NCBI RefSeq assembly: GCF_902652985.1
Contig: NC_047022.1
Coordinates: forward strand, 17,112,001-17,176,000
Origin: Pecten maximus
Taxonomy: Eukaryota
Direction: 5' to 3'
DNA length: 64,000 nucleotides
Below are positions 33,401-55,733 of the stretch, piece by piece (position 1 is the stretch's first letter; each line of letters opens with the position of its first letter). The notes beneath the pieces were generated by a model. That model made no database searches, was not told the DNA's origin, and saw only the letters and a list, made by a program, of their open reading frames with translations. The position numbers and the translations under genes are program-made.

Positions 33401-35971
33401 ACAAGAAATATGGCATTAAGCCAGCTAACAGGTGAAGCTACTAACATGAGGTACCCTGTATCTTACTGTAGATTACACGAGTACTATGTGAGGACTATTC
33501 GACTCTTTAGCAATAGTAATCGTGGTATACATTTACTCCTTTAAAATATCGTCGGAATATATTTATTCTTATCAGCCACAACATAAATTAAATTCAATTT
33601 ATTTTTCAATTAAGTTATCAAAATTAAGGATATTATGCTTATCGTAGAGATGTACAAGTTACTTTCACGTTTCTTTGAATTAATTTACGTAGTATTTTAT
33701 CCTTTTTGTGTTACTAATTTTAGAGCCTTGCAGTCACATCCCACTATAAACGACGAACTTCCACTTCGCCTGTTAACCGGATGCATCAAGATAAAACCAA
33801 ATGTACGAAAATTCGCACACGACAAAGTCTCGTTTGAGGACGGGAGTTCAGAGAAGATCGACACAGTTATTTTTGCCACTGGATACAACTACACGATACC
33901 AATAGTGGACGAATCCATTACGAGGGTGAAGGAAAATGAAACCTGTCTCTACAAGTTTATGTACCCTCCCCACCTGCAACACCCTACTCTAGGCATTATT
34001 GGACTTGTCCAGGCGATCGGAGCTGTCATGCCAATATCGGAAATACAATGCCGATGGTATACAAGAGTCATAAAGGGTGAGATTTGATTTTTTTGTTTCA
34101 CTTTTAATTTTAACAAGTTTGATTTCTACATTAAAATGAATACAAGAACAGTCATAATATATATCATTTTTCTCCAATTAGTAAAAACGAGTGTCTTAAT
34201 AGTTTCTGTCGAAAACGATCTAGTGTTAAAAATGTTATCATAGTTTTAAATCAACAAGGTAAAATTAATAGGCTATATAGAAATGTTGAGGATATGGATC
34301 TAGTTTGAAAACCACTGATTACTAATTCTAATCAAATTATATCAATACAAAATGTTTATAAAGCTACGATGAATTGCCCTACCGATAATTTATTGTAATA
34401 AGCTTAGGTGATTTGTTTTATCAATAATTGACCAATTAAAATGCTTCTCTCTCGCAAATTTGGACTATTCAAGCACTTATATAACGATGAAAGATATAGT
34501 ATAAGCCTCAGTTGTTAAAACATATATCAGTTGTAGCGGAAGTGACACCTGTTGGTGTCGTCTGCTGGTTTAGTTCTACCATCTCGGATAATTATTATAT
34601 AATAATTAAACCTTCAGTATTCTACATGATTAAATATATGATGAGCGATGAACTAGATAATGATGATTATACAGAATACGTGAAATTTTGATAGCTCAGA
34701 TACGAAAAGCAAAAATATCAAATTTTCTTCAAATTTCAAAATACATGTTTAGATATCAGGTTTTTTGGAATGATAAGACAAAGAAGCGGATAAAGGATTT
34801 TTTTCTGCTTTTATAAGGACTTTGCAAACTTCCTACGGAAGCGGAAATGATGGCTGACATTGCGCGAAAAAGAGAGACGGTTGCTAGTGGTTACTACACC
34901 GCTAAACGCCACACAATCCAGGTAGGTCACAATTATCGACATTAACTTATATAGAAGGATATTCCCCGTTTTTCAGTGTTTAATATTATTCTACAGCAGT
35001 CGATCGCGTATTTGTTGCGGAGTAAAATCCGGGTTTGCCAAACCATTTGCCGTTTGTGACATCGCTTTTGTTGGCGTAATCATTTCTAAGAGAAGAGAGT
35101 CCATCAATAAAAGCAGATTTTTTTTGAAAGACTGTGTAGAGTTAGTTAAATCATAAGAATTAAGTTGAATATATTTTTATGTTTTGGACTTATAACACAA
35201 AAACACAAAACGGAGTGTACTCTCACCATCAAACGCTACGCGTTTTATTTAGTGCACATTCCGTTTTTTGTGTTAAATCTCCATAACATAAACTATATGT
35301 ATAATTTAACCCCAAAGTAACTCAAAAACATGAAGACTAGCCACGATTGATCATGACACCTTTCGTACAAGACGATTCTACCACAAAGCTCATTTGAGTG
35401 TGAAACAATTACTTGAAACAAAGTTGAAGAAATAACCTCGTGAATATATTATGTTTGTGTTAAGTTGAAATATGTTTTCCTTTATCTAAAGACATTCTGG
35501 ATTGACTACATGGACGATGTTGCTGAACAAATTGGCGTGAAACCCAACTTACGGCGAATGGTTTTTGAGGACCCATATCTAGCCCTGAACTGTGTTTTCG
35601 GACCTTGCCTTCCTGCACAGTATCGTTTGGAAGGCCCAGGAAAATGGAACGGTGCCAAATCATCTATCCTAAATGCCATGAACCGGTATAGCGCCTCCAT
35701 GCGGTCAAAAGTTATGCCAAAGAATCATAGTTCGTCCGCTATGAAAAACATTGACAATAGTTCAGCTTCGACTGGAAACAAGATTATTGACCTTTTGACA
35801 CGCATTGGGATCAGGAAGCGTAACTCCGCTTTGACTCTAGACAAGAATGAACACTCGTCACTGATAACAGACACCACAAACAGCAATATTGCGACTTTCC
35901 CAACATTTCTGAAATCCTTCTATACTATTTTTATTGTTATGTTCCTGTTCTTTTGTGTGTGTGTTGTTTGA
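27409..35971 (+). CDS. Flavin-containing monooxygenase (dimethylaniline monooxygenase, FMO5/FMO2-like), 6 exons, about 584 aa
   Basis: Exons 27409-27982, 31813-31868, 33244-33431, 33724-34076, 34818-34921 and 35492-35971; all GT-AG, phases 1,0,2,1,0, total 1755 nt. Motifs: FAD-binding GAGCSG, GGLW, NTSKEMM, FMO signature FQGKVMHTHSY, NADPH-binding GIGNSG, FATGY, YRLEGPGKW, and a C-terminal hydrophobic anchor. Confidence 0.96.
28312..28967. repeat. 24-bp minisatellite (CCACTAAACATCCTCCGATACACC), about 27 copies, in FMO intron 1
   Basis: Near-perfect tandem array; generates stop-free octapeptide ORFs on both strands. Confidence 0.95.
29380..30095. mobile_element. MITE / non-autonomous TIR transposon with TA target duplication (Tc1/mariner-pogo type), in FMO intron 1
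   Basis: TA|CTGTATACCTGGTAATTTTCG ... CGAAAATTACCAGGTATACAG|TA: a perfect 21-bp TIR, with subterminal GGGCGAA motifs. Confidence 0.88.
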
Positions 35972-38854: not shown

Positions 38855-40623
38855 CTATTCAATTTGTATATTATTTAGAAACCTGTCTTCAAAATCTGTT
38901 TTCGTCATGGATGAATAACAAACCGTCTCGTAATTATTGTGATCGAAATGGTGACCTTGGAAATTAGCACTTGTAATCAACACCTGAGCAGTTTTAGCCT
39001 TAACACCAGCTGCAAACTTGCCATGAAACGTTGACTTAGGATTGGTTATTTTACTCATCACGTGATCTCTCACGTAACTACGATATTTTGGCGAGAATGC
39101 GTCAAGAATAGTCTTTACTAAGGATGCGTAAGCCTCAGGGTCGTCAGGTTTGTACCCGGGACCAAATTTCCAGTACGGAATGAACTTAGGGGGATTCTTC
39201 TTTGGCACACGGACGTTTGAAATTTCTCTGACGTAAATTGCCTTCAGATTTGCTGTCGACTGCTTGTCGAGGAGAAAGAAACAGATCTCAAGTAGTCGTT
39301 CGATGTCCATGAACGGAGTGACGATATAGACTTCCGTGGAGGCCTCGGAGAACCAACGCTGAAGGAGTGACTGCCATACGGGATAAATATCTGTTCTTCC
39401 ATTCACGAATCGACCGATAGATATCTCTTCTGGTGCCTTTAATTTTTTAGTTTCCTTTAAAGAAAGATATTCGATATATGTGATAAGGTCTTTAACGTAC
39501 TTTCTTAATCATAAATATGTACTGTGTAGCAATGTAACCGTCTATAGCTGATGACATTTGAATATTACACACCGACATTAATCAATAGACATTTACACAT
39601 AAAACACCTATACCATTGATAAACATATATAGCATATTCACGTGATGTTATGCCAAGTCACAAAAATTCTTCCTAAGTGTATTCCATCACTCAGTTGCTA
39701 AGCACCTGCAGAAGTTAAAATTGGATAATGTGTTCATAGTCTTAGTTAATTCGAACTCGAATAACGAGAATATCCTGCTGAACTCTTAAGTACAAATTCA
39801 GTTCCAACAAATATTTCTGTAAAATACACACAGTTACCTCGGATACTCGGTATTCTCAGGTTTATATATGACCCCAATGATTTCGAGATAATGAGGTCCG
39901 AGTATACTATATATCGATAATGTTTTTCCTCAAAGTTTAGGGCAAGGAGATTTGTTTAAAAAACAAAAACTTACTTTTTCTGAAGAGACATCTTCTTTTG
40001 CTTCAGTTTTCTTCGTTTTTACCTTGATGTCATTAGATGTGCTGCTGTCCGCTTTCCGTTTTTCATGCCTGTTTGAAATAAATCATAAAGCATTACTGTT
40101 TAGTTGGTAATATTTGCGGGGGATTTTATTTCAACGCGAAAATAAAACACCAGTGAATATTTACACATACACATAAAAAGTGTTTACTGCAGAATGCTTT
40201 ACAAGGCGTGGTTGTGCGAAACATAATATCCGGACTTGAGTCCGATTGGGACAACCGCAAAATATAAACCCTACGAAGATAACTTTCCAGTAATTACTCG
40301 TATACGTTAAAAGGATGAATACATTTTCATTTTGTCACATAATGACATAAGGTTCAGATTTTTTGAATATTTTATAAGAAAAATTGCTTGAAGGATTAAC
40401 CTTTTTTGACAGGTGCAGCTTGTTTGACTTAAATGCTACCTGGATTAATATCGAATGTATATAATATAGCATAACTTATGTTTTATACTCGATACAAATA
40501 CAGGAATGATTCTTCGTTCTACACTTATATCTGTTTCATAATATACAATTTTTTTGTTGTGCGTATGTGATAAAACATTTGTAAACAGAGGAATCAATAT
40601 ATCTACTGTTGTACTTACCCCAT
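38855..40623 (-). CDS. Single-HKD phospholipase-D-fold protein, putative nuclease (Nuc/BfiI-like), 3 exons, about 232 aa
   Basis: Exons 40623-40619 (ATG GG|GTAAGT), 40068-39975 and 39454-38855; phases 2,0; 699 nt. Protein: MGHEKRKADSS...EVYIVTPFMD...TFHGKFAAGVKAKTAQVLITSANFQGHHFDHNNYETV...*. Shows the PLD-superfamily pattern hhTPF...HxK...SAN...NxE. Confidence 0.82.
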
Positions 40624-40656
40624 ATTGCGATCTCGAGTCAGAGGTCCGGCTATAAT

Positions 40657-40699
40657 GACTGATAAATTTAATATATCTTATAAATATATAGATTATATA
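40657..40699 (-). promoter_or_regulatory. Candidate TATA plus Inr core promoter of the PLD-fold gene
   Basis: Minus-strand TATATAAT (40699) and TATATATT (40690), then Inr TCAGTC with its A at 40660, 37 nt before the ATG at 40623. Confidence 0.5.
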
Positions 40700-43600
40700 C
40701 CCTCTGTACAAAACAAACAACCATTTATCGGACAAGAAGAAACATGTTTTGTTGACAAATAAGGAGATATTTGCTTTCGGTGGGGGCGGGGATGGGGCCA
40801 TATTTGATATGATTCAACATAGATCGATAAGGTAATGGTTAACCTAATGTAGCAGGGCTTTATTACATACTTTATATAAGTATCTGGGCAATTTGTGTTG
40901 TTAAGCGGTCATACGTGGTGAGTCTTGACCAATATTTTATCATAAATGACCACGACAGTACCATACGCACGTTCGATCGTGCTATTGCTGCGGCACTTAA
41001 CCCCTTTAGTTGAGTTTTTATTTGGTATTACTATAATTGTTAATAACCCTCTTACACAGATTTAATCGAGGGTAATAAAACATTATTTGTAGGAATTTTG
41101 TTTATCATTAATAGCCCAGTTACATACGCTTTCAGTGCTTGAATTGATAAAGCTCTTTAGTGGGGTTATTTTGTATCATTATTTAGTACAAAAGCCTTGT
41201 AGCTCAATTTGTTTGTACTATGGCGGATAACAAATAAATCTTGTTATTTGGAATCAATTATAAATTACAACAAATGCTTTTGTTTATAACTGATACCATA
41301 TAACCTCGTTAGTTGGGGTTATTTTACATAATTATTTACAGTTACCTCGTTTTTACAAATAAAATTCCTTTGTTGGAATAATTTGCATCTTTAATAACTA
41401 TATTAATTTTGTTACTCGGGTCAGTTGAGACGTTTTGTAATCATCGATCACAAATAAACATCATGACCATTTTATTATCTACTGTCTTTTTAACTACAAT
41501 CACATTTCGAAGCATCGGATGTTTAGTCAAGCGTTTTTATGACGGGGTAATCCAGGTCAGGCGAACGTTTTATCATGGGTCTATTATTAAAGGTCAACAT
41601 GGCCGATACCAGATACATGCCTACAACACCCCATAAATTACCTCGGGTGTAATAAATTAAGTCAACAAACTTAAATGATAATCTACGTCACGATTTAAAG
41701 GGACGTAATACAACTATTTGTGTGTATCATAGGGGGCTGAGGAATGCATGGAATCTTATGATTCGGGTAGAACTATATATGTTATGAAGTAGAAATATCT
41801 TAAAACAGTGATATAAAAAGAAAGAATGGACGTGGATCATATGTTTTAACCGTCAAGATGTCAACAAAAATCTTATTGACTCTTGATCGAATCTTCTTTA
41901 AAACAAATAAAACCGTAAACATCATTAGTTGACTGGGATTTTTTATTTTCCAATATGGTACTTATCGTTCAAACATAACCAATGCTACTTTAAGAAACCT
42001 TTGACACGAGTTCTACTTCAAAAGCATTACACTAATGACACACACGGACATGCCATCTAATCAAATAAAAGATGAAATATATGCCAAATAATGCTTATAA
42101 ATACAAACTTCTAGGATACGTTTCATATAATATCAAATGAAATAAAAATTGACTTAAAATCTTATATTCATTAAATGAATAATACTTTGTAATTTGTTTT
42201 ATATTTAATTATGAAAAAAACCTATTAATTTGAAATTTTCGGCTAGCAATGTGCATATTTTTAGTTTAAACCATAGACTTCGTTGTAAAAACACTCATTC
42301 TGATGGTATGTGAAAATCTTATAGTGTTGCGCAAATTACTTCAACCTTTGTTTATGTAATTTTTCTCCGGACTCCGCTTCCCTTCTTACCTCCGTCTTTT
42401 ATACTCAAGTATCACTGACTAGAATGACTAATCAGTTGTATTATTAGTTTGATTGAATTTTTACTCTATTTAACTCTCAACGTGTATTGGAATACACCAG
42501 CATCTTGTTTGTCTTTCGTAAATCCACCGGGGTATATTACACTACTGACATATGCAAAAAATATAAAATTGACGAATCCACACACAGGATACAGGATGTT
42601 TTCGTAATAAAAGCTGATAAGTTTGAAATTTAATAATATCTTCCATACGTATTAGTTCTGAGGACAGTGATTCATCATACTTTCAACAAAGACAACAAAC
42701 AAACAAGTACAAATGAGGAAAAGAATAAAAAGCAAAGTTAGTTTATATATAATTCATTGTGACAAATCATTATCAAAAGTAAAGCTTCCCCCGTCAAATC
42801 CGCTTAAAATGTATCAGAGAGGTAGCAAACCCCCCAAAAATAGACATAATCTGCTTTTAATGCGAGTCAAACGTAATATAGGACAACGGTGATGTTATAT
42901 TGTTAATGTTTCACCATACTTGTCAGAATGGTTTCCCCTATGTTCTAAACATGGTTTCTGTTTTCAAAAGTTAAATGCTACTAAACGAGGAAATGTATAA
43001 GGTTCTTGATAATACTAAAGTTATAAAAAAAGTTATAAACAGAGAATGCCGGAAGTTTCACAGCGTTGATATCTAAATAATATATCTACCTACTGGATAC
43101 ACCAATTGTATTGAATAATTGAATATATCCCTCTGCTCTGATTTATAAATGTGTTGATTAACAACGACCGTTATACATTCGCCGTTTTCACAAACAATTA
43201 ACAATTGTCACATATAATACATGAGAACTATTTAAATAACACAAGGGAAATAACTCCTATATATTTTGTTTTGTTTTGATACACACATTTATTGTACATG
43301 GTAAATACATAGTTTTGAATTCATCGAACACTGGGAATTCTAGCAGTTAATTTTCCATAGACAGTCACGGGCGAGATATAATCCCAATCAAATGATTCTT
43401 GTCATGCCTCTCTAGATTAAAACAGATAAACAGTATTCCACATGTCATGAAAACAAAATATCACATATTTTGGTGGGAAAAAAACTGCAACAGCAACAAG
43501 GATAATGTAGGGTATAATTAGATACAACGCATATCAATTTAGTAAATAAAATGGGAGACTGTTCTGAATCATTTACAATCCAAACTGCCTGTCATACCAA

Positions 43601-44605
43601 TGCATCAAATGAAACTCGTTGTAGACAATTATACCTAATCAATAATTGTTCAATGTCAGCGTGCTAAGAGTGATTGTTTTAAAAGACCGAAAGTTACGTT
43701 ACACATAAAGAGGCGGTGTTCAATGGAACTTCGGGATGCAATTAATTATTTGTTAACATTGAATAAAAAAAAAAAGAAGCTCAAAAGCTCAGAATGTGGT
43801 AAAAGCATTATTATAACTGAAGATTTGTTTGAAATAAGGATAGAATCTTTAAGAAAGCATATTGGTATTAATGATACAGGCTGATACTTTTTTTCAAGAA
43901 AAAAATAATATTCAATTTGGGTTCGGAGAGGTAGTGATAAGAACATCTCTAGGGTGTGTCCTCAATTACATCTTGATGAACATGATAAATGGACCGATAA
44001 GTTTTTGTTTCTGGCCATATCTGATTTCGTAAACAGTATTAAGATGATAATTCTGCCTTGTGAAAACATAACTTAATAGTTTGTTTCGTGTTTTTACTAT
44101 TTTACCAAAGATTGGCAGTCTGATTAATTCATAAAATATATATTTCATTTTTTTCCCTGTATAAGCGATATCATTGATAAATAAGTCGCTGATTTCCATA
44201 AGATATGACTGGGGTCAAATTGTAAGATTGGATACATCCAAGTACTAATTGTACATGTCTGCTTCATTAAACTTTTTCCGTTGTAGTTCATCTCATGTGC
44301 TGTACTAAATTGGCCCTATGTCTTCATGATTGTGGGTCTTTAGGATATGTCTTATTCTAGAGTTTCTAACTAAGGGGAGATAAGCTAATATTAGAATCTT
44401 CTTGAGCAATCCTTGATAAAAAAAACTACATACACAAATAGCATCGCATTAAAAATCCATAAACGCGATATTCACTGTATTACTGTTGGAATGAAACATT
44501 TAGAGTGCTGACAGTACTCGTTATACGGTCGAGAGAAAAAAATTCAAATTGACATTAAAATGTCATTTCAAATGTGATTTTGCAGCGTTTTCAAGAACAC
44601 ATTAT

Positions 44606-47600
44606 TTACATGCTAAACGGCGTGTTGTTGTTGAACGCTTGTTCTACCCTTTCTGCCAAGCCTTTTTGGTCAATTTCCGTTAATGCACTTTTCAAAGTTT
44701 CAAGTCGTTTGTAAGGATCGATACTTTCGTTGTCCAGCCAGTGTAAAAGAAGCCTTAGTTTTAACTGATTTCCGTCTTGCGGGTTTGGAAAGATGCCAGC
44801 CAAGCGATCAGCCGTCACCATTGGTATCCCTAAAAGTGTTGCTAATGAGACGTACTCATTGTTGGGTATTTGTCTTGCAAGGAGAGTCATGCTTCTCTCT
44901 GAGAACACCTCTGCAATAATCAAAAATGCATTAGTTATTTAGAATTGAGGCAAGTAATAAGGTCTTATATAACCTGTCTGTCTACGATTTATATTTCCCA
45001 ATATTACCTGCTGAAAGACTCTTTTGAAATGAAAAAAGCCGAAAACATATAATCATTTCATGGAGTGAAACTTATTTGTAGAAATATCGTCTGCCGTGTG
45101 ACAGGTGGACAGTACAGATCAAGATATTCCTATGGGAGCTGAATGCATCAGATATTTGTTAAGAGAAGCGCAATTATGTTTGATCAGTATTGTTTAATGA
45201 TTACCATGTATTGTACAGTAAACCAAATTAGTATCACAGGTAGGCTAGATTAGGCAGATCTACATCCTCTAGTTTCACACATGTATTTATGATATATCAG
45301 AATAAATAATTTGTTTTGTCAATGCCATTTTTGCAAAGTCGCCGGAGTTAAAAAGACATTTAATCGATATTATGCTAATGTTCAAATTTTCATCTTCTTT
45401 GGCGTTCAGTGAGAAATTGAAATTTTAAGAATAGTTCTATAGAAAAAAGAATAGAAATGCTGCTGCATTAAAGGGGTATCTAAACAGCAGATCCAGTCAA
45501 AACTGTGATATTTTACAGGCCTATAAATTCCTACTATGGTGCAATTTAACAGAAGTAACATGGTTAACGTTTATTATATGTCTTGGCAAACCGGAGGACT
45601 TGCTGTTGACATGTAATTTGTTAAAATGTTTGTAAATGTCACCAATACATCAGACAAATGCATGTTTCAGGGGAACATAATTAACTCATTAAATTGCATA
45701 AATTGCACAAAATAGCCATGTCGTTTTGCTCAATAGTGTCTAAAGCACAAAACAAGAGCATAGGTTTTTACCAGATTTGACTTTATAATATGAATAAACA
45801 CTGTGTATTTTGACCTTGAAATGCAAATGGTGGTTGTGAATAATATCAAACAAATGTGGAATATAAAGAGGTGTTTTAAACATAAAAAATGTTCCTATTT
45901 GACACTATAAAAACCCTAGACATGGCAAGAAGATTGCTTTCAGAAAGAAATGTTTAACTGCTGAATTTGGGGTAAAATATGTCTATTTCAGAAAGAGGCC
46001 ACAAACTCAACTGTTTAACAATCTGATTTAAAACAAAATCCTTTTTACTATGATCAGAAGTCATAGGAGCATTTTCATTTGATTGAAATGCTTCTCTTTT
46101 TGCCATGTTTGTGTACTATTATTCACAACCACCATTCGCATTTCAAGGCTAAAACAAAAGAAGTGTTTTATACGTACATAAAGTAAAGTCCGGTCAAACA
46201 AATGCTCTAACCCTGTGCTATAGAACTTGTGAGCATAACAGCTTGGCTATTTTTCAGGTTTGGTCGTTTTTGTGACTCAGAAATACTCCATGCTATATCT
46301 TACCAAAAAATAGCTCTGTAGAAGAAACCGATAACATCCACACCAAATGTTTGGTGATTGTAAGAAACTGAATGTCCAAACAAATATGTTGGTATATTAC
46401 ATGACTATTTTTTGCATTTTTTCATATATCTATTCGTGTTTGAAATTTACCATTATTTTGCCGTATAGATGGCCGTTAAGAAAGCTTTTACTCAATGTAT
46501 GTAGTAATCTATTGAATTTCATTATAGGAGAGTTAAAGAAAAACAATGTTTTTCATACATTTATGAGCTGGTCGAAGACTACTTAATGATATTAATCTTC
46601 GTAAAAGAAAGCCTCTATAATTAGCGTTAATTGATAATTGTTTTGTTTCTATGAATGACCATTAGTAGAACAGTAGAACATAGATTACCCGCACCTGGCG
46701 AAACTCTGGGTCTGATTTCTGGGATAGGTTCATATTTCGGTTTGTGTTCATTTCGCGGTTGATTTCTAGATGACGATGTTTGTGGCAAAGATTTTTTGAT
46801 ATCTTCCATATTGATACAGACTACGAAGTCTTTATCTTCGAAGCTGTCGTATGGTACTGTCTCAGGTCCGACTGCGCCCAAGCTAGACAGTTCTTGATTG
46901 TAAGCAGTTGTTTGTAATCCTGGGGTTCTATTTAATGTAGCCTGGGAAGATGATAATGGACTGCCAGGGTTGTTTCTCTTCCGCAATTCTTTCAATGCAT
47001 GGAATACTGCATTGTGAAGACGCCGTCGGTTCCGACCACTGTCTAGGTCGTATTCCAGGGTAGCAAAATCTCCAATTCCAAATCCCGCGTTTCTCTCTAC
47101 ATGGAATGAGAGTGAGTTATCGTGATTGTTACGGTCAAAGATGATGAAACGACTCACTGGGGTGACGGATTTAAGAAACTTTATTGCCGTATTATTAGCC
47201 AACGAAACCCTCACCCTGTTCATGTTCTTTAAACGTATTGTCGGGGATGTACATGTAGGCAGTAAATCCATGCCCATTTCATTCGTTCGTTCCTTTTCCT
47301 TTTGTGATCTTTCATCCTGATTCACTATTTCTGAGCGTAAAAATAATATCTCATTTGCTTCTCTTTTAGTAAAAAGTAAAATGTTACACCTTGGGTCGTC
47401 GAGGTCGTAAACATATTTTACTGCGGCAATCGCATCTAATTGATGGACATTCGGTCTGTGTCTTACACAAATTACTCTGAAAGATAGAATAATTATTAAT
47501 TATTGAAAACATTCTATCAGTATGAATGGGCTCAAAAGTACAACAATATGAAGAATATGTACATTAAACTAATTTAGCACAGGTATTGCAATGAAAGATG

Positions 47601-49937
47601 AAACATGAAAATAGTAATCACTGAAATACTATCATCTATGTTTTTTCTATTTTTTTTATCAATGTCAGTTTTTAGGGTACCGTTTTGTTTCGTTGGGCTT
47701 GACTTCGTTTCGTTTCGTTTGAATCGTTTTGTTTCGTTTTGCTTTCGTTAAGCACTTTACAGGTACCCCGGTTTTCAGGTAAATATATTATTTTGGCGAA
47801 AATTAGCTTCAACTCGGACGGTATTTTCCCGAATCGGATCAAGCCACTATTACACATGTCTACCCATGTGCACGGCAGTACTCGAAGGACACCCCTCTAT
47901 GTATCTTCGGTACGTTTGGTTAGACAAATCAAAAGTAAACAGTGAGAAACCAAATCTATACATGTAGGAGTAATTGCCTACATAAAAATACTGCACCCAC
48001 TTTTTTATCTTCACATCAGCCAATATTGTCATTTTTAAGTTTCATTACTGAGTGTATATATTGTAGAAATTTTTACTGTGCATATTGAAGGATGTCAAAT
48101 AATTTCATTGACGAATAAAATACTCACGGACAGAAGTGATCAGTGGTAATTTCGAAAAGAGTTGGTTCAATTTCCTTGACGGTCGCTGTTTCCAGTTCAC
48201 GTACTTCATCGTCCTCGAAATACAGGACAAGTAGTGTAGCTATTTCGCTGGCTTCGAGCATATGGTCTAACGGTTGTATAGACACTGTCAGGTGTACTGG
48301 AACTAGGAACTGTCGGTCATGGAACACGTTCACCATGTCAGAGATTCCAAGTATTCCGTGATTTTCTCCCAGCGTTTGTTTCACTCTCTGTTGTATTTGA
48401 ATACCATCAAGGGAGGTAACCTATGTACAAAGTGATAAGAAAATATTAAAATTTTCAGACTCAGAAGCATTTGGATTGTAGGTGACAAAGATACAATGCA
48501 AAGAAATACCAGTAAATATGAGTTATGTCTTTTTGTCTTTTTGAATTCACTGTGTAATATAGGAGCTTGAAATAACAGGCGTTCTTCCTTTGTTTCTATT
48601 TTAGGGTACGAGGTAATTGAATAAAAAGGTGAAATATAAACCTTACGCGCATTTGAACATTTCGTCAATACCTGTAGGGCAAAATGACAAAAATCTAAGA
48701 CATGTTACAGTAAAAACTACACATTTTATGCTATCATCACCCTCAAAAACGTTTTTTTCCACCTACACATTTTACTCTATTATCACCCTCTTAAAATAAG
48801 CGGGCTGAAGTTAGCAGCGGATTCGTTATTCGTTATTGGGGATTCGAATAACGAATCCGCTGCCAGCAGCGGATTGGGGATTCAGTTTTTTATGTTTAAA
48901 TGATGTTTCTTTTTATTGACGTTTTGACGATTGGATTGAAATAACAAATCCGTTTCAGCCGTGGATTAGAGATTCAGTTACATATAAGTATTTTTCTTAT
49001 TATATGCGATTGGGGATATCGAATAACGAACCCGCTGCCAGCAGCGGATTGGGGATTCGAATAACGAATCCGCTGCCAGCAGCGGATTGGGGATTCGAAT
49101 AACGAATCCGCTGCCAGCAGCAGATTGGGGATTCAGGTTTTTTTTATGTTTAAATGATCTTTCTTTAAGTTGACATTTTAATGTTTGGATTTAAATAACG
49201 AATCCGCTGCAACAGTGGATTGGGGATTCAGTTACATATAAGTATTTTTTTCTTATTATATGTGATTGGGGATTCAAATAACGAATCCGCTTGATAAACT
49301 ATGATTGGAGATTCGATTTTACATTTTTATTTTGTGATTCGAATAGCAAATTTGTTGCCAATAGCGTATTGTGGATTCAGTTTATGATGTTTAATTGACG
49401 TATTTTATCATAAATTACGAAAATGGTAATTTGCGGGTATTACAATGATATAATTACTTGGTAATTCAATCAACAATAATGGAATTCTAGTTCAAATCTG
49501 CTGCCAAGAGTTTCTTTCTTGTGGGAGGTTTATCGTCTCTTTACAAGTAGACAAAGTTCTATGTTTCTTCGCCAGCACTCTATGTTATATATTGTAATAT
49601 ATAAAGACCAGAGTATCATTTCGATATAGCTGAAGGTTTGATTGGAATGCAAACATGTATACGGAATCTAAAATTATATCAGTAAAATAATCTTGGTTAT
49701 TATATTTATGCTACAAATAGGATAATATTGTTAAACTATTCTGCTGTTGTTCGAATCTCCAATCATATATTAAAAGGAAAAATATCAATTGAACATGTAT
49801 GTAACTGAAACCCCAAATCATATTTTATAAGAACTAGAAATGTCTGTAAGACATAAATGGTCCCGTCTTCACATGAAATTAGTTATCGATACTTGGATAA
49901 TGTTTGTATTTTAACCAATAAGGGGCCAGAATTTTTT

Positions 49938-49968
<31 letters not shown>

Positions 49969-52900
49969 ACAAAAATAAATAATGCCATTGTCTTTGTATA
50001 GCCAGACTGCATATTATACCAAATTTCATAAAAGTCGAACGATATTTAAGTATCGACCAATCAGAAATCTCTATTTGGCGGCCATCTTGAATCGTTGTTC
50101 TGTTTTTTTTTTTTTTTTTTAATTGTTTATAATGCGTGCTGTCATGGTATCATTTCTCCCATCAATATCCATAATCAGATAGAACAAACGCTATTACAGG
50201 ATATGTTTTAATAAAGTTTAATATTGAAGCGGGACGGGACGGGACGGACACGCGAACACTATTTATTAGATTTTTACCTGTGAAATATTGAGAATTATTC
50301 ATTCTATCAAAATGATATTTTGAAAAATATCACTTTTTCTGATTTGACCAATCAGAACACTGCTTAAAAACGACAATGCGGAAAGTAAAGATTTGAAATT
50401 ATAGGATGTATAATGTAAGATAGAATATAGGCCATATAACGTCACAATTTTGCGTACATTTGTAAGCCACTGACAAGGGACTACAATGGATTCTGGGAGA
50501 GATTGAGCTGTCTCGGTATATTTTACTATGGAATCTAATGAACAGAATATTTAACAGTATCTTCAGTAATACCAAATATATTTCATTCGTGTTGCTAATT
50601 TTTTTTTTTTTAAATATCAAATAATTAGCCACATTCATAAAATATAGTTGGTATTACTGAAGACACTCCTCTATACCACCATCCCCCACCATTTCATGGC
50701 GGGGGTATAAAAATAGCAATTAGGCTTAAGAAACTGAATCCCCAATCCGCTGCTGGCAGCGGGTTCGTTATTCGATATCCCCAATCCGCTGCTGGCAGCG
50801 GGTTCGTTATTCGATATCCCCAATCCCATATAATAAGAAAAATACTTATATGTAACTGAATCGCTAATCCACGGCTGAAACGGATTTGTTATTTCAATCC
50901 AATCGTCAAAACGTCAATAAAAAGAAACATAATTTAAACATAAAAAACTGAATCCCCAATCCGCTGCTGGCAGCGGATTCGTTATTCGAATCCCCAATCC
51001 GCTGCTGGCAGCGGGTTCGTTATTCGATATCCCCAATCATATATAATAAGAAAAATACTTATATGTAACTGAATCTCTAATCCACGGCTGAAACGGATTT
51101 GTTATTTCAATCCAATCGTCAAAACGTCAATAAAAAGAAACATCATTTAAACATAAAAAACCGAATCCCCAATCCGCTGCTGGCAGCGGGTTCGTTATTC
51201 GATATCCCCAATCACATATAATAAGAAAAATACTTATATGTAACTGAATCTCTAATCCACGGCTGAACCGGATTTGTTATTTGAATCCAATCGTCAAAAC
51301 GTCAATAAAAAGAAACATCATTTAAACATAAAAGAAACTGAATCCCCAATCCGCTGCTGGCAGCGGATTCGTTATTCGAATCACCAATCCGCTGCTGGCA
51401 GCGGGTTCGTTATTCGAATCACCAATCCGCTGCTGGCAGCGGATTCGTTATTCGAATCCCCAATAACGAATAACGAATCCGCTGCTAACTTCAGCCCGCT
51501 CTTAAAATATTTGTTTTTCGTTCCCCTCCCACACGTTTTGTATGTAACTTTCAGTATCACATGCGATCAGTATAAAGACAAAGTGATTATTTCTTTCACT
51601 TGCTGTATTAAAAACATTTCTTTTGATGTTCCTTTCTTTTAAAATGATTAATGAATATTGGAATAATAACATATACCAACCTCGATAGTGACCTGCATGG
51701 TACTCTCCACAGAATCGGGTGGGAATTCAATTTTCATCCTCTCATTTTCTGGATCAAGATTCTCTACACAACCTGCTCGAGTAACTTCAACAGTCTGTAC
51801 TTCAATTTGAGACGTTATGAATACAGCGTCAATATCGAGTTGATCTGTTTCAATACTCACAGTAATTTCCCCTGCCTGGATTAAAGAATAAGAACAGAAA
51901 ATAATCAGCATTTTCAATTATCCATCAATCATTTGTTCAAAAACTATATACACACTCTTTACGTCACAAGTACCAGAAAAATAATACATTACTTTCTTCC
52001 GTGGCTCTTACAACATCGGGCACAATCTGGATAGAGATATTGGGTCGTTAGCAGTTTTTGACTTTGGAAAAATACACCAAAAAGTCGAAATTAATCTTTC
52101 ATTAAAGTTAGTTTTAGTTTTTAAAATTAGTTTTCTTGTTTTTGCCCTTTTATCTTAAATATAAGTGAAACGATCGCTATAATCATACACTCATAAATAA
52201 GATGAAATTTTTCATTCGACATGAGGTTCGTGATATTTCAATTATAAGACTCAATTTATAATGAAAATACAGTCGAACCTTGTTATCGCAAAGCCAATGA
52301 GTTCATTGAAAATCCCGAAAATTCGATGTAATCGAATATATTCCATGTAAACTGTTTGCTCTAGCAACTGCATTTCGTTCGTTCGTTTTCCTCGATAGCG
52401 AGGTTTTACCTAGCCCGAGTTTCGCCTTGCCCTGACACCATGCCTGGTGTAGGGCAAGAGCGCACTACTATATGAAAACGTAGAATTCTCCAACACCGTT
52501 TAGTGTCGCTAAGATTTTGGTGCAAAGATAATAAGATCGGGGGTGACATAACACCTACTTACATATATGAATAAACGAGATATTTATTGACCCAAAAACA
52601 CATATTCAGTCCAATGTCGGTGTTCTATTCCGTTCGTATAGACTCTCGCTTTACGCTGGTAAAAAAAAACACTTGACTTGAAGCTATATTGCCCTATGAG
52701 TGCGCGATGGAGCGAAACGAACAATCTTTTTCGGATGAAGTTTACCGCTTATAATTTAAATATTAAATGTTACAGGTTTTTGAGAAAAAAAAGCTTAGTT
52801 TTCTTGATTTAAACCATGTAAGAATAAAACCACAATAGATGATAGTGTGTCTTTTTGGTCCATTGCGTTCCAATTCTGGTGATTAATTGCACCATCACTT

Positions 52901-55733
52901 ACAAAATGGCGGGTCAACAGTGTGAAATTGTTGACAAGCGTAAAGTGAGGGTCCATACGTTTTCATATAGCAGTGTGCTCTCGCCCCTTCACCAAACATG
53001 GTGTCAGGGCCAGATGAAACTCGAGCTAGGTTTGACCTTACATAACCTTCTATCATTATGATTTGTATCCCTTGCAAATGTCTACAATCAAACAAAAATG
53101 TTTATGAACTCTGTATTTGCATTTTTATTTTCAAACATACTATTTCAAGAATAAGGAATTGAATATAATTGTATTACCTGCTTTTTGACGTCATACCGAT
53201 CCCAAGATTGTCTCCCTTTCCGCCTGACATGGAAGGTAAATATGGCGTTACGCTTAGGGATTCTAGGTGTCACGGATACCACTATTTTACCATCTGAGTT
53301 TTTTAAAGTGTAAAACTCTCCTTCATTTTCATTGTCAAGAGTGAGATAAGGCATTGGGAAAATGTCGCTCTCTAAACATTCCTGTTCGGTTAATGTAGGA
53401 CATGTGATGTCAACATCAATAACAGTTGACTCGAATGAGATTTTGTCACTTTGAATTTCTTCGAAAGGAAATTCACTTTTTCTTTTTTCTGAATCCCATG
53501 GTTTTGTTTTCACACAAATGATGTCGTTGTACGATATACATCTGAAAGGTAACGAAAACTATCAGTATGTACTTCATTGAATTTCTATCCAAATAATTAT
53601 GAAGCCAGCATATGTATTCTAAATCATCAAATAACCTCTGAACTGATCATTTATTTAGCCAGTGGATATATTTCGTCAATCCAATCCTTTCGATTATCTT
53701 TATATTTTCTTATTACAACAGATTAGCAAATCAAAATCAAAATTGTATCAGTGATCAATTCAATTTTTTTTTATTACGTACCATGACTATTTCTAATGAC
53801 ATTCAAGACAAAAGTTCATGTCGATGATAAGCATTCCAATGCTTTATGTAAAAACAGAAAGGAGTGAACAATATCAAAAAAGTTGCTTTCTGATAGAAAT
53901 GACTCATATGAGAAAATTTAATTCCTTTGCAATATTGGTAAAAAAAACTATTCAAGCTTTCAAAAAAGGAATTGTACATTAGTAATTTATACCAAATATA
54001 AAACAAAAAAACTTACTCAGCCATCCTGCTTTCTGCAACGTTTGAAAGAGTATTTTCATTCAAACTGAAAGATAATATTTTATTGCATTCGTTGATTAAA
54101 AGGGCATTATAAATAATATTTTATGACATTACTTTAGGATAAGCAGATATTGGTAACCCATTAAATCATTCTCATACCATAAACACTGAGTTTGATTTCA
54201 TCAAAAAACACACAGGTTATTTAAGATTATTCAAAATGAGATAAAACATTGTCTTGTAGGCAACGACCAAGGGAAAGTGTCATGGCCGACAGTATGATCT
54301 CAGTGTCCTTGTGCCATAACAAGTTAAGTCAGACGTGCTTATTGATATGCCTAGTGGTTCCATTGTCACTTCAATATTTTTCATTTTGAATGTATGACTT
54401 AACCTGAATATGACATAGATTTGAATGGCTGGTATCGTCAATTAAGCAGAAGACGCTTACACTATCGGACCACCTGGTCTTATTCCCCTTGTACTTCTTC
54501 AAGGGTTTCCATGCAGATATATCATGTTTCAGTAATACTTTATTGATTTTGAGTTAGAAGTACAGTTTCGTTATCATGTCTGTATTCTCTGATGTTTTTG
54601 TTAAATGTGATAACGTTGAACATATCATCTTTTATTTCTTTCATGATTTTCAGGAATATCCCCTTAGCATCACTGAAGGCAACAGCTGATCTATGCTGCA
54701 ATCTGTCCACAAGAAAGTTTGTTTAATCCTACTTCATAATCGAAGTTATTTTCATATGTATATACATTTTGTACTTTTGTCCTTATATGGCATTTGCTTG
54801 CAATGATTACATGGGTTTTTAATAATATTGAGAATGTCGGATACATCAAGAATAACATGTTAAAATAGTAAATTAATCATATTTTTAAGATATTGCTTCC
54901 AATTGTTCTTCATTTTGTTCATGAATGTTAACTTGAAGTTGAATTCATTATTGATCCACGTTTCCCTTATATTATTTGTATAATATATGACTGATAGCTG
55001 AAGGAAACTGATAACTTTCATTTGCTCAAAAAGCCAAGTAGATGAATAAATTGTAATGTAAACTCATTTGGAGCCTATATGCTTACAGTAAGTATGGCAG
55101 AAACGTGGCTTTTATATACCTCTGGAATGTTTTAACAGATTATGAAAACAAATTCGGATGTTCATATTTTTCACATACATTATATTATTTTGTGTATACA
55201 TTCATATCCATTCATCACTTTCTTTTAAATATCTTAAAGTGGGGCAACCCGATTGAACTTTTTAAATAAAACATAATTATGAAATGTCCCGAAAATACAT
55301 ATGCATGTTTAAGAAGAGTCGCAGTTAATCAAAATATCTATTTATTTTACATCAATTGTGAAACAAGTAACATAAACTTAAATGCATCACTTTTCTTGGC
55401 CAAGAGGGAGGTGTGGTGATCTTAATAAGTGAAGAAGCCCCACATGGTCTGGTTGGTGACTCTGGTCGCCTAGGTAAAAGGTGAGTATGTTACCGTTATG
55501 CCATTCGACCAAACTTTAAAAATGACAATACAATTGTTTTTCATTTCAAATGGCATTTCGCTTAGCAAGTATTAAACTCAATGAGAAAAATACTGTTGAA
55601 ATGTTTTAAGATAAATTTCAAGAAATAAATTATCTTAAAACACCAATCGATGTCAATATATGGAGTACATTTGTATATTACATGCTATTTTAGACCTCTT
55701 CCTCGCTTATTACCTGCTGGGATTACTTCCCAT
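44606..55733 (-). CDS. Death domain-containing protein 1 (DTHD1)/PIDD-like ZU5-ZU5-UPA-death domain protein, 7 coding exons, about 668 aa
   Basis: Exons 55733-55714, 54064-54017, 53541-53178, 51875-51681, 48420-48128, 47476-46695 (or 46689) and 44910-44606; all GT-AG with matching phases 2,2,0,0,2,1; 2007 nt open. ZU5-like GCVE...IEFPPDSV...VTIEV...SDMV...FEITTDHFC, UPA-like CNILLF...SPTIRL...FDRNNHDNSLSFHV, a low-complexity linker, then a death fold FSERSMTLLARQI...LATLLGI...LLLHW...LKSALTEIDQKGLAERV. The start exon is less certain. Confidence 0.85.
47674..47770. mobile_element. Short MITE-like element with a (TTTCG)n interior
   Basis: Inverted ends GGGTACC...GGTACCC around degenerate TTTCG/TTTTG pentamers. 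Confidence 0.45.
48799..51500. mobile_element. Foldback/MULE-like non-autonomous element (2702 bp) with long modular TIRs and 9-bp TSD, in an intron of the DTHD1-like gene
   Basis: The left end AGCGGGCTGAAGTTAGCAGCGGATTCG... is the exact reverse complement of the right end ...CGAATCCGCTGCTAACTTCAGCCCGCT. CTTAAAATA is duplicated at 48790-48798 and 51501-51509. Arms are built from 38-bp subrepeats containing CCGCTGCTGGCAGCGG. Confidence 0.92.
49832..50711. mobile_element. Helentron-associated non-autonomous element (HINE/DINE-like) nested in the foldback element
   Basis: Starts AACTAGAAATGTC, has an internal (GGGAC)n microsatellite at about 50230-50250, and ends in the stem-loop CCCCACCATTTCATGGCGGGGG followed by TATAAAA; no TSD. 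Confidence 0.6.
52408..53031. mobile_element. Decayed MITE with about 75-bp imperfect TIRs, adjoining a pogo/Tigger-like MITE remnant (about 52270-52409)
   Basis: CCTAGCCCGAGTTTCGCCTTGCCCTGACACCATGCCTGGTG...TATATGAAAACGTA matches the reverse complement of 52955-53031. Confidence 0.65.

What the first reader, a model, noticed from the sequence alone, without database searches (positions are those of the whole stretch)
38855..55733. Death-domain adaptor (ZU5-ZU5-UPA-DD) tandemly linked, and splice-compatible, with a bacterial-defence-type PLD nuclease gene
Seen: two same-strand genes about 4 kb apart. The death-domain exon ends ...AGC AT|GTAAAT, so its stop codon overlaps a possible phase-2 donor at 44609. 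The PLD gene's exon 2 (40068) has a phase-2 acceptor, so that splice would give an open ZU5-ZU5-UPA-DD-linker-PLD protein of about 898 aa. Also seen: the PLD gene has its own TATA/Inr and a perfect ATG GG|GTAAGT first exon, and a minus-strand AATAAA at 43293-43288 could end the DD transcript. Two separate genes is therefore the default model and the fusion a possible isoform. Known: PIDD/DTHD1-type proteins are oligomerising death-fold scaffolds, and single-HKD nucleases (Nuc, BfiI, Zucchini) must dimerise to form one active site. Inference: a sensor/scaffold plus dimerisation-activated nuclease module, i.e. a candidate undescribed invertebrate immune or cell-death system. Phase compatibility alone has a 1-in-3 chance of being coincidental.
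Basis: partly seen in the sequence, partly recalled or inferred. Interest (0 to 1): 0.85.

Follow-up and report, generated by a model that had tools for sequence, protein, structure and literature searches.

The report
Two neighbouring scallop genes, no shown link
A scallop death-domain scaffold gene and a small PLD-fold nuclease-like gene do sit head-to-tail about 4 kb apart and could in principle be spliced in frame, but every test I could run points to two independent genes, not a new immune or cell-death module.

Summary
I found two minus-strand genes with canonical GT-AG introns.

- **Upstream gene:** 6 exons, 652 aa. It ends in a UPA domain confirmed by fold and a probable death domain. 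The two ZU5 domains could not be confirmed.
- **Downstream gene:** 3 exons, 232 aa. It is a single-motif PLD-fold protein with H-K-N-E catalytic-type residues, and it is predicted to form a homodimer.

The stop codon of the upstream gene does overlap a GTAAAT donor-like site. That site is in phase with exon 2 of the PLD gene and would give an 882-aa open fusion.

Nothing supports a functional link between the two genes:

- The PLD gene's orthologues in two other scallops are annotated as standalone proteins of 231 and 233 aa with the same short MG/ME start.
- None of about 90 family representatives, the longest 457 aa, carries a death, UPA or ZU5-like region.
- The only other PLD paralogue in this genome has no death-family gene within about 28 kb.
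- The death-family paralogues have no PLD neighbour.
- The usual read-through splice, from the penultimate exon to exon 2, is out of frame.

The scan has noted other ZU5-UPA-death genes elsewhere in this genome. My verdict is two ordinary neighbours, each of modest interest on its own.

The parts
55714..55733 (-). Death-domain gene, coding exon 1. It encodes MGSNPS plus 2 bases, in a good Kozak context, and the start resembles an N-myristoylation motif.
53178..53541 (-). Death-domain gene, exon 2 (121 codons). The fold is unassigned.
   Evidence: no paralogue in this genome
51681..51875 (-). Death-domain gene, exon 3 (65 codons). It is the putative N-terminal part of a ZU5-like domain.
   Evidence: The ZU5 call rests on motif resemblance only; Pfam gives no hit.
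48128..48420 (-). Death-domain gene, exon 4. It is the putative C-terminal part of a ZU5-like domain and ends in ..DHF-C just before the UPA domain.
   Evidence: Paralogues have SFS/TFS at the same place. There is no Pfam or PDB sequence hit.
46695..47476 (-). Death-domain gene, exon 5. It holds the UPA domain (residues about 26-167 of the exon) followed by a roughly 90-residue disordered linker.
   Evidence: - AF2 model.
- VIA Z-scores: 14.7 ankyrin-B ZZUD, 12.6 NLRP1 FIIND, 11.1 CARD8, 10.2 UNC5b. The next unrelated match scores 6.9.
- Foldseek ranks the same proteins first.
44609..44910 (-). Death-domain gene, last coding exon, holding the probable death domain. The stop TAA lies at 44608-44606.
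   Evidence: - A profile of this exon plus 4 paralogues hits the FADD and PIDD death domains in the PDB at E 0.007-0.03, and the top 12 hits are all death domains.
- Pfam Death matches 3 of the 5 sequences at E 0.0044.
- The window sequence itself gives only bDLD3 at E 0.014.
44604..44612 (-). Donor-like site CAT|GTAAAT overlapping the stop codon. This is the only site that would give an in-frame fusion to PLD exon 2.
43288..43293 (-). First canonical AATAAA downstream of the death-domain gene's stop. It is the probable polyadenylation signal and implies a 3' UTR of about 1.3 kb.
40684..40699 (-). TATA-like heptamers 60-76 nt upstream of the PLD gene's ATG.
40619..40623 (-). PLD gene, coding part of exon 1 (ATG GG), followed by the donor GTAAGT.
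   Evidence: Orthologues start MG.. or ME.. and then P-x-KRK.
39975..40068 (-). PLD gene, exon 2. It encodes a lysine-rich tail with a KRKAD motif that resembles a nuclear localisation signal.
38858..39454 (-). PLD gene, exon 3 (199 codons), holding the whole PLD-fold domain. The stop TAG lies at 38857-38855.
38927..39025 (-). Catalytic-type residues H144, K146, N164 and E176 (numbered within exon 3). There is no aspartate at the HKD position.
   Evidence: These residues lie in the predicted dimer interface.

Best explanation
These are two independent, neighbouring protein-coding genes on the minus strand of a scallop chromosome. The assembly statistics match Pecten maximus, and the closest proteins come from Argopecten and Mizuhopecten.

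**Gene 1 (652 aa).** This gene belongs to a lineage-expanded scallop family of PIDD/FIIND-like proteins. It has an unassigned N-terminal part, a ZU5-like region (inferred), a UPA domain (shown by fold) and a C-terminal death domain (probable). I infer that it acts as an oligomerising death-fold adaptor, possibly self-cleaving at the HF-C boundary and possibly anchored to membrane by N-myristoylation.

**Gene 2 (232 aa).**
- It has its own promoter and a 5-nt coding first exon.
- It carries a basic tail that resembles a nuclear localisation signal, followed by one PLD-fold domain with H-K-N-E residues.
- I infer that it works as a homodimer that builds one composite active site, like Nuc, NucT, BfiI or Zucchini, and cuts phosphodiester bonds in nucleic acid.

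**The link between them.** The in-frame donor at the stop codon of gene 1 is most likely a coincidence.
For: **Gene models**
- All introns are GT-AG and all phases fit.

**Gene 2 stands alone**
- The orthologues are annotated as 231-aa and 233-aa proteins that begin MG/ME-P-x-KRK, at 87-90% identity.
- Family members number 90 and range from 69 to 457 aa. None is long enough for a fusion and none matches my DD, UPA or ZU5-exon profiles or Pfam Death.
- The named members are all marine invertebrates.

**PLD fold**
- The AF2 model has pLDDT 88.8.
- Foldseek ranks NgoAVII, SauUSI and TDP1 first.
- VIA gives Z 13.3 for FAM83A, 11.6 for SauUSI, 11.3 for NucT, 10.6 for BfiI and 10.3 for Zucchini and Nuc.
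- Eight of 50 relatives weakly match Pfam PLDc_2.

**Homodimer**
- The model supports binding but does not show it. The score is 0.56 and the best of 3 controls is 0.01.
- That mark was reached by 21 of 30 proteins solved as pairs of one chain and by 0 of 23 solved as single chains.
- On eukaryotes it was reached by 17 of 29, but by only 1 of the 7 with no older solved relative, so the pass may come from memory.
- The runs agree in at least 90% of contacts, and the partner's pLDDT is at least 80.
- The interface includes H144, K146 and E176.

**UPA and death domain**
- for UPA; for the death domain.

**No family-level linkage**
- The only PLD paralogue (C3:39.86 Mb) has no DD, UPA or ZU5 profile hit across the ~58 kb examined around it (about 28-29 kb to either side).
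- DD-family paralogues on C6, C8 and C15 lie nowhere near a PLD gene.

**Splicing**
- The usual read-through splice, from the exon 5 donor to PLD exon 2, meets a stop after 16 codons.
Against: - The stop-overlapping GTAAAT is a decent donor (7 of 9 consensus positions) and is in the right phase.
- The genes are only 4 kb apart on the same strand.
- No RNA evidence could be obtained, so a fusion isoform is not excluded.
- Orthologues of gene 1 could not be retrieved because of length limits on the search.
- ZU5 is not confirmed.
- Nuclease activity is inferred from fold and residues only. About half of the wider family has lost H, K or N.
Confidence: 0.75

Rival explanations
1. A low-level read-through (conjoined) transcript uses the donor at the stop codon. 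It would make an 882-aa fusion of ZU5-like, UPA, death domain, linker and PLD, as a minor isoform alongside the two main products.
For: - There is a donor-like CAT|GTAAAT at the stop.
- It is phase-compatible with the strong acceptor of PLD exon 2, and the frame stays open across the junction.
- The first canonical poly(A) signal lies 1.3 kb past the stop, so the donor is transcribed.
Against: - No fusion-length relative exists among 90 family representatives.
- The orthologues are standalone.
- The PLD gene has its own TATA-like element and first exon.
- The standard conjoined splice is out of frame.
- A G before a TAA stop creates GTAA by itself.
Confidence: 0.12
2. The two genes make separate proteins that nevertheless work together. 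The death-fold scaffold would recruit or concentrate the PLD enzyme so that it dimerises and cuts nucleic acid during an immune or cell-death response.
For: - The genes are adjacent on the same strand.
- Single-motif PLD enzymes need dimerisation, and a homodimer is predicted.
- Marine invertebrates are known to pair death-like adaptors with many effector domains (PMC8195603).
Against: - The PLD protein has no death-fold or other known adaptor domain with which to dock.
- Paralogues show no co-occurrence.
- HKD and PLD are not mentioned in the main text of the PMC8195603 survey (0 occurrences).
- The flanking genes are ordinary: a flavin monooxygenase.
- The PLD protein is 87-90% identical between scallop genera, which suits a conserved housekeeping role better than a fast-evolving immune effector.
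Confidence: 0.08
3. The PLD-fold protein is a non-catalytic pseudo-enzyme, a scaffold like the FAM83 DUF1669 domain, and not a nuclease.
For: - The best structural match is FAM83A at Z 13.3.
- About half of the wider family has lost H, K or N, while W27, W34 and D50 stay invariant.
Against: - The window protein and all of its closer relatives keep H, K, N, H and E/D.
- These residues meet across the predicted dimer axis.
- One relative is fused to an RNase H1-type nucleic-acid-binding domain.
Confidence: 0.15

Closest known systems
Nuc / NucT / BfiI catalytic domain / Zucchini (single-HKD PLD-superfamily nucleases)
   Same: - It has one PLD-fold domain of about 150-170 residues.
- It has an H-x-K motif followed by a conserved N and an acidic residue. 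From my own recollection of the literature, the H-K-N-E spacing resembles BfiI.
- The predicted symmetric homodimer brings the two motifs together.
   Different: - Identity is only 8-16%.
- Pfam PLDc_2 gives no hit for this protein.
- The family is metazoan-only as far as its members are named.
- There is no aspartate at the HKD position.
- It has a basic N-terminal tail instead of a signal peptide, a DNA-binding domain or a mitochondrial anchor.
- Its activity is untested.
NgoAVII / SauUSI nuclease domains and PADLOC DrmC / ZacB (bacterial restriction and defence PLD nucleases)
   Same: - These are the best Foldseek E-values, at 6e-6 to 9e-5.
- Eight of 50 relatives weakly match ZacB and a few match DrmC.
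   Different: - The window protein itself matches no PADLOC model.
- No bacterial member of the family was identified.
- 'Bacterial-defence-type' is a loose resemblance, not membership.
TDP1 (tyrosyl-DNA phosphodiesterase)
   Same: - It shares the PLD fold and an HKN-type motif without the aspartate.
- UniRef names one orthologue after TDP1.
   Different: TDP1 has two motifs in one chain of about 450-600 aa. This protein has one motif in 232 aa.
PIDD1 C-terminal half and the NLRP1/CARD8 FIIND (ZU5-UPA plus a death-fold domain)
   Same: - The UPA fold is followed by a death-fold domain.
- A His-Phe-Cys motif sits where PIDD1 has HFS and NLRP1/CARD8 have SFS. Paralogues have SFS or TFS there.
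   Different: - It has no LRR, NACHT or CARD.
- ZU5 is unconfirmed.
- It has Cys in place of Ser.
- Its N-terminal 120 residues are unassigned.
- Self-cleavage is untested.
Ankyrin / UNC5 ZU5-ZU5-UPA-DD supramodule
   Same: It gives the best UPA match, Z 14.7 to ankyrin-B 4d8o, and shares the UPA-then-DD order.
   Different: It has no ankyrin repeats and no receptor ectodomain. The tandem ZU5 is not shown.

Membership tests
PLD superfamily, single-HKD nuclease type | PLD alpha/beta sandwich fold | tested here: met
   - The AF2 model has pLDDT 88.8.
- All top Foldseek and VIA matches are PLD-superfamily chains, with Z from 9 to 13.3 over 131-156 aligned residues.
PLD superfamily, single-HKD nuclease type | H-x-K ... 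N ... acidic catalytic motif | tested here: met
   H144, K146, N164 and E176 are present in the window protein and in 26 of 50 relatives. The HKD aspartate position holds Val.
PLD superfamily, single-HKD nuclease type | Match to the Pfam PLDc_2 / PLDc models at the curated threshold | tested here: not met
   The window protein gives no hit even at E 10. Eight of 50 relatives match below threshold, best E 8.3e-5.
PLD superfamily, single-HKD nuclease type | Homodimer that forms one active site | tested here: inconclusive
   - The prediction supports binding but does not show it. The score is 0.56 against a best control of 0.01.
- The mark was reached by 21 of 30 solved one-chain pairs and by 0 of 23 single chains.
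- The pass may come from memory of solved PLD dimers.
PLD superfamily, single-HKD nuclease type | Metal-independent phosphodiester cleavage of nucleic acid | not testable with these tools
   This needs a biochemical assay.
ZU5-UPA-DD proteins (PIDD1 / ankyrin / UNC5 / FIIND type) | UPA beta-sandwich | tested here: met
   The top 7 VIA matches are all UPA domains (Z 9.4-14.7). The next match is unrelated, at Z 6.9.
ZU5-UPA-DD proteins (PIDD1 / ankyrin / UNC5 / FIIND type) | C-terminal death domain | tested here: inconclusive
   - The profile hits FADD and PIDD death domains at E 0.007-0.03.
- Pfam Death matches 3 of 5 family sequences at E 0.0044, below the curated cut-off.
- No fold model was made.
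ZU5-UPA-DD proteins (PIDD1 / ankyrin / UNC5 / FIIND type) | ZU5 domain(s) before the UPA | tested here: inconclusive
   - Neither single exons nor a paralogue profile give a Pfam or PDB sequence hit.
- Only motif resemblance and position speak for it.
ZU5-UPA-DD proteins (PIDD1 / ankyrin / UNC5 / FIIND type) | HFS/SFS self-cleavage at the ZU5-UPA boundary | not testable with these tools
   The sequence shows H-F-C here, and SFS/TFS in paralogues. Whether cleavage occurs is unknown.
Conjoined (read-through fusion) gene | Spliced transcripts joining exons of both genes | not tested
Conserved two-gene module | Adjacency or fusion recurring in paralogues or other species | tested here: not met
   - Paralogues are unlinked in this genome.
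- No family member is a fusion.

The most novel reading that the evidence does not exclude
The death-fold scaffold and the PLD-fold enzyme form a scallop-specific effector pair. They would be joined by splicing at the stop-codon donor or by recruitment. Oligomerisation of the death domain would then force the single-motif PLD domains to dimerise and switch on a nuclease during infection or cell death.
Probability: 0.07. Interest if true: 0.7.

Novelty: new member of a known kind. Interest (0 to 1): 0.28.

Why it matters
If the pair were a real module, it would be a first example in animals of a death-fold scaffold wired to a PLD nuclease. That would echo the adaptor-plus-effector logic of bacterial conflict systems.

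As it stands, the value is more modest, in two parts:

- **The PLD gene.** It documents a small family of single-motif PLD-fold proteins in marine invertebrates that Pfam does not recognise.
  - Some members have an intact catalytic set and others a lost one.
  - Some members are fused to nucleic-acid-binding domains.
- **The death-domain gene.** It adds one more PIDD/FIIND-like UPA-death gene, this one with an HF-C boundary, to the scallop expansion.

Both are cheap to test at the bench.

Tried and rejected

**Searches that found nothing**
- The search for homologous proteins with exon 5 (260 aa) and with the death-domain exon (100 aa) found nothing within the allowed length ranges. Orthologues of the 652-aa protein lie outside those ranges, so these blanks say little.
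- Pfam gave no hit on single exons of the upstream gene, and phmmer against the PDB gave none either.
- The profile of the ZU5-like exon found nothing in the PDB.
- The Atlas search with exon 5 gave only low scores.
- The profile of the long PLD subfamily found nothing in the PDB.
- A paper search for the orthologue's locus name found nothing.

Exons were handled one by one by reference.
- In scripts I checked only frames, phases and the few codons across the two candidate junctions.

**Reading rejected**
- I rejected membership of TDP1, because this protein has one motif and TDP1 has two.

**No obstacles in the sequence**


Full report
**Setting.** The window is AT-rich eukaryotic DNA (about 35% GC, no N). 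It is G000:C8:17112001-17176000 of a 918.3-Mb assembly in 3,983 contigs. The closest proteins come from the scallops Argopecten irradians and Mizuhopecten yessoensis. From my own knowledge the assembly size fits the king scallop Pecten maximus, and earlier notes of this scan name that species. The nearest gene on the low-coordinate side is a flavin monooxygenase on the plus strand (27.4-36 kb), so this is not an obvious immune cluster.

**Checking the observation.** Reading the minus strand and checking frames exon by exon gives two clean gene models.

- *Upstream gene.*
  - Its exons are 55733-55714, 53541-53178, 51875-51681, 48420-48128, 47476-46695 and 44910-44609, with TAA at 44608-44606.
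  - All introns are GT-AG and all five junction phases fit, which would happen by chance about once in 240. The product is 652 aa.
- *Downstream gene.*
  - It has ATG GG at 40623-40619 followed by GTAAGT, then exon 2 at 40068-39975 and exon 3 at 39454-38858, with TAG at 38857-38855.
  - The product is 232 aa.
  - The last codons of the upstream gene read AGC AT|GTAAAT.
  - Exon 2 of the downstream gene needs two bases in front of it.
  - AT plus exon 2 stays open.
  - TATA-like heptamers lie 60-76 nt before the downstream ATG.
  - AATAAA at 43293-43288 is the first canonical signal after the upstream stop.
- *One correction.* The fusion would be 882 aa, not about 898.
- *The donor-like site.*
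  - It matches 7 of 9 consensus positions, as good as the true donors here, and only 3 of 74 GT sites in that stretch do as well.
  - Even so, any gene ending in ..G TAA carries GTAA, and phase agreement is 1 in 3. The coincidence is therefore not remarkable among the many same-strand neighbours of a genome.

**The downstream gene is a PLD-fold protein.**

- *Sequence searches.*
  - Pfam and PDB sequence searches find nothing for it.
  - An all-against-library HMMER search finds a small family of 90 representatives at E ≤ 0.001.
  - Eight of 50 aligned members weakly match Pfam PLDc_2, 4 match the NgoFVII PLD domain and 3 match TDP1.
- *Structure.*
  - An AlphaFold model built on that alignment is confident, with pLDDT 88.8 and pTM 0.86.
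  - Every good match to it is a PLD-superfamily chain.
  - Foldseek ranks NgoAVII, SauUSI and TDP1 first.
  - The VIA second look gives Z 13.3 for FAM83A, 11.6 for SauUSI, 11.3 for NucT, 10.6 for BfiI, and 10.3 for Zucchini and Nuc.
- *Catalytic residues.*
  - The window protein keeps H144, K146, N164, H169 and E176, as do all its closer relatives.
  - About half of the wider family has lost them, whereas W27, W34 and D50 never vary.
- *Dimer.*
  - A two-copy prediction supports a symmetric homodimer but does not show it. The score is 0.56 and the best of 3 controls is 0.01.
  - That mark was reached by 21 of 30 proteins solved as pairs of one chain and by 0 of 23 solved as single chains.
  - On eukaryotes it was reached by 17 of 29, but by only 1 of the 7 with no older solved relative, so the pass may be from memory.
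  - The runs agree in at least 90% of contacts and pLDDT is at least 80.
  - The interface brings H144 and K146 of one copy against E176 of the other.
- *Likely substrate.*
  - The first 45 residues are lysine-rich, with a conserved KRKAD motif.
  - One amphioxus relative carries the RNase H1 N-terminal nucleic-acid-binding domain (Cauli_VI, E 1e-18).
  - Together these point to a dimeric enzyme acting on nucleic acid. That is an inference; no activity was tested.
- *"Bacterial-defence-type" is only a loose likeness.* A few relatives weakly match the PADLOC ZacB and DrmC models, the window protein matches none, and every named family member is a marine invertebrate.

**The upstream gene is a PIDD/FIIND-like UPA-death protein.**

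- *UPA.*
  - Exon 5 was folded with six paralogous exons from this genome. Residues 26-167 form a confident beta-sandwich.
  - Its seven best matches are all UPA domains: ankyrin-B at Z 14.7, NLRP1 FIIND at 12.6, CARD8 at 11.1 and UNC5b at 10.2.
  - The next, unrelated match scores 6.9.
- *Death domain.*
  - The last exon aligns with four paralogous exons.
  - That profile finds the FADD and PIDD death domains in the PDB at E 0.007-0.03, and the top 12 hits are all death domains.
  - Three of the five sequences weakly match Pfam Death.
  - The death domain is therefore probable but not proven.
- *ZU5.*
  - Pfam and PDB sequence searches with single exons or a paralogue profile give nothing.
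- Its presence rests on motif resemblance and on its position before the UPA domain.
- *Two small features.*
  - Exon 4 ends in H-F-C exactly before the UPA domain, where PIDD1 has HFS and NLRP1/CARD8 have SFS. Paralogues here have SFS or TFS.
  - The protein starts MGSNPS, which fits the N-myristoylation pattern (plus my own knowledge).

**Are the two genes linked in function?** I could run the following tests.

1. *Fusions.* The 90 family representatives are 69-457 aa long. The longer ones carry other N-terminal regions, and none matches Pfam Death/ZU5 or my local DD, UPA and ZU5-exon profiles.
2. *Orthologues.* The Argopecten and Mizuhopecten proteins are 231 and 233 aa and start MG/ME then P-x-KRK. 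This is the same layout as the three-exon model here. A 5-nt coding first exon is unlikely to be annotated without transcript support. That is an inference, but it argues that the gene has its own start in those species too.
3. *Paralogues.*
   - This genome has one other PLD-family gene, at C3:39.86 Mb.
   - That gene is the orthologue of a 393-aa Argopecten protein with a different N-terminal domain.
   - The ~58 kb examined around it (about 28-29 kb to either side) has no hit to the DD, UPA or ZU5-exon profiles.
   - The death-family paralogues lie on C6, C8 and C15, far from either PLD gene.
4. *Splicing logic.* Read-through chimeras normally use the penultimate exon's donor. Here that donor (phase 1) joined to PLD exon 2 meets a stop after 16 codons. 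Only the unannotated donor at the stop codon would work.
5. *Literature.* A broad survey of death-like adaptors and their effectors in bacteria and marine animals does not mention HKD or PLD in its main text (PMC8195603).

None of these tests supports a module.

**What could not be done.**

Junction counts and synteny remain the decisive tests.
- Orthologues of the 652-aa protein could not be retrieved because the word-indexed search only sees proteins of 0.55-1.75 times the query exon's length.

**Verdict.**

- The best-supported reading is two independent neighbouring genes (confidence about 0.75). A minor fusion isoform (about 0.12) or a two-protein module (about 0.08) is left open.
- Each gene is a new member of a known kind: a PLD-superfamily protein that Pfam does not recognise, and one more scallop UPA-death protein of a type this scan has already noted elsewhere in the genome.

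Noticed in passing
L004:172-9426 (G000:C3:39859000-39868999), minus strand: - This is the second PLD-family gene of the genome. It is the orthologue of a 393-aa Argopecten protein (P0007/P0095) and carries a conserved N-terminal domain of about 150 aa, shared with nemertean and annelid proteins.
- The exon for residues 150-207 is present twice (L004 3076-2906 and 6651-6478).
- The Atlas feature search puts the N-terminal domain near the RnlA/LsoA toxin N-terminal domains (score 0.86). That is a lead only.
   Followed up: partly
P0004 (Branchiostoma belcheri, 331 aa): This PLD-family member is fused to an RNase H1 N-terminal (Cauli_VI) nucleic-acid-binding domain (E 1e-18). That hints that the family acts on nucleic acids.
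   Followed up: partly
window 38858-39454 (-) and alignment A1: About half of the PLD-family members have lost the H, K or N catalytic residues, while W27, W34 and D50 are invariant in all 50. This suggests a second conserved function or surface that does not depend on catalysis.
   Followed up: partly
window 48128-48140 (-) and 47470-47476 (-): A His-Phe-Cys motif sits at the boundary before the UPA domain, where PIDD1 has HFS and NLRP1/CARD8 have SFS. Paralogues on C8 have SFS/TFS. This may be a self-cleavage site with a Cys nucleophile.
   Followed up: partly
window 55714-55733 (-): The upstream protein starts MGSNPS, which fits the N-myristoylation pattern (Gly2, Ser6). That would place the scaffold on a membrane.
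   Followed up: no
window 44322-44427: A dispersed repeat of about 100 nt lies in the presumed 3' UTR of the death-domain gene. At least 39 further copies at 79-87% identity lie on many chromosomes.
   Followed up: partly
window 48980-49190 and 50670-51560, both strands: The introns of the death-domain gene hold repeated units that translate as ..NPLPAADWG.. and ..SAAGSGFVIR.., in both orientations. This looks like a satellite or transposon remnant.
   Followed up: no
window 27409-35968 (+): These are exons of a flavin-containing monooxygenase gene (Pfam FMO-like, E 1e-65, 7e-41 and 5e-25). The gene converges on the 3' end of the PLD gene.
   Followed up: partly
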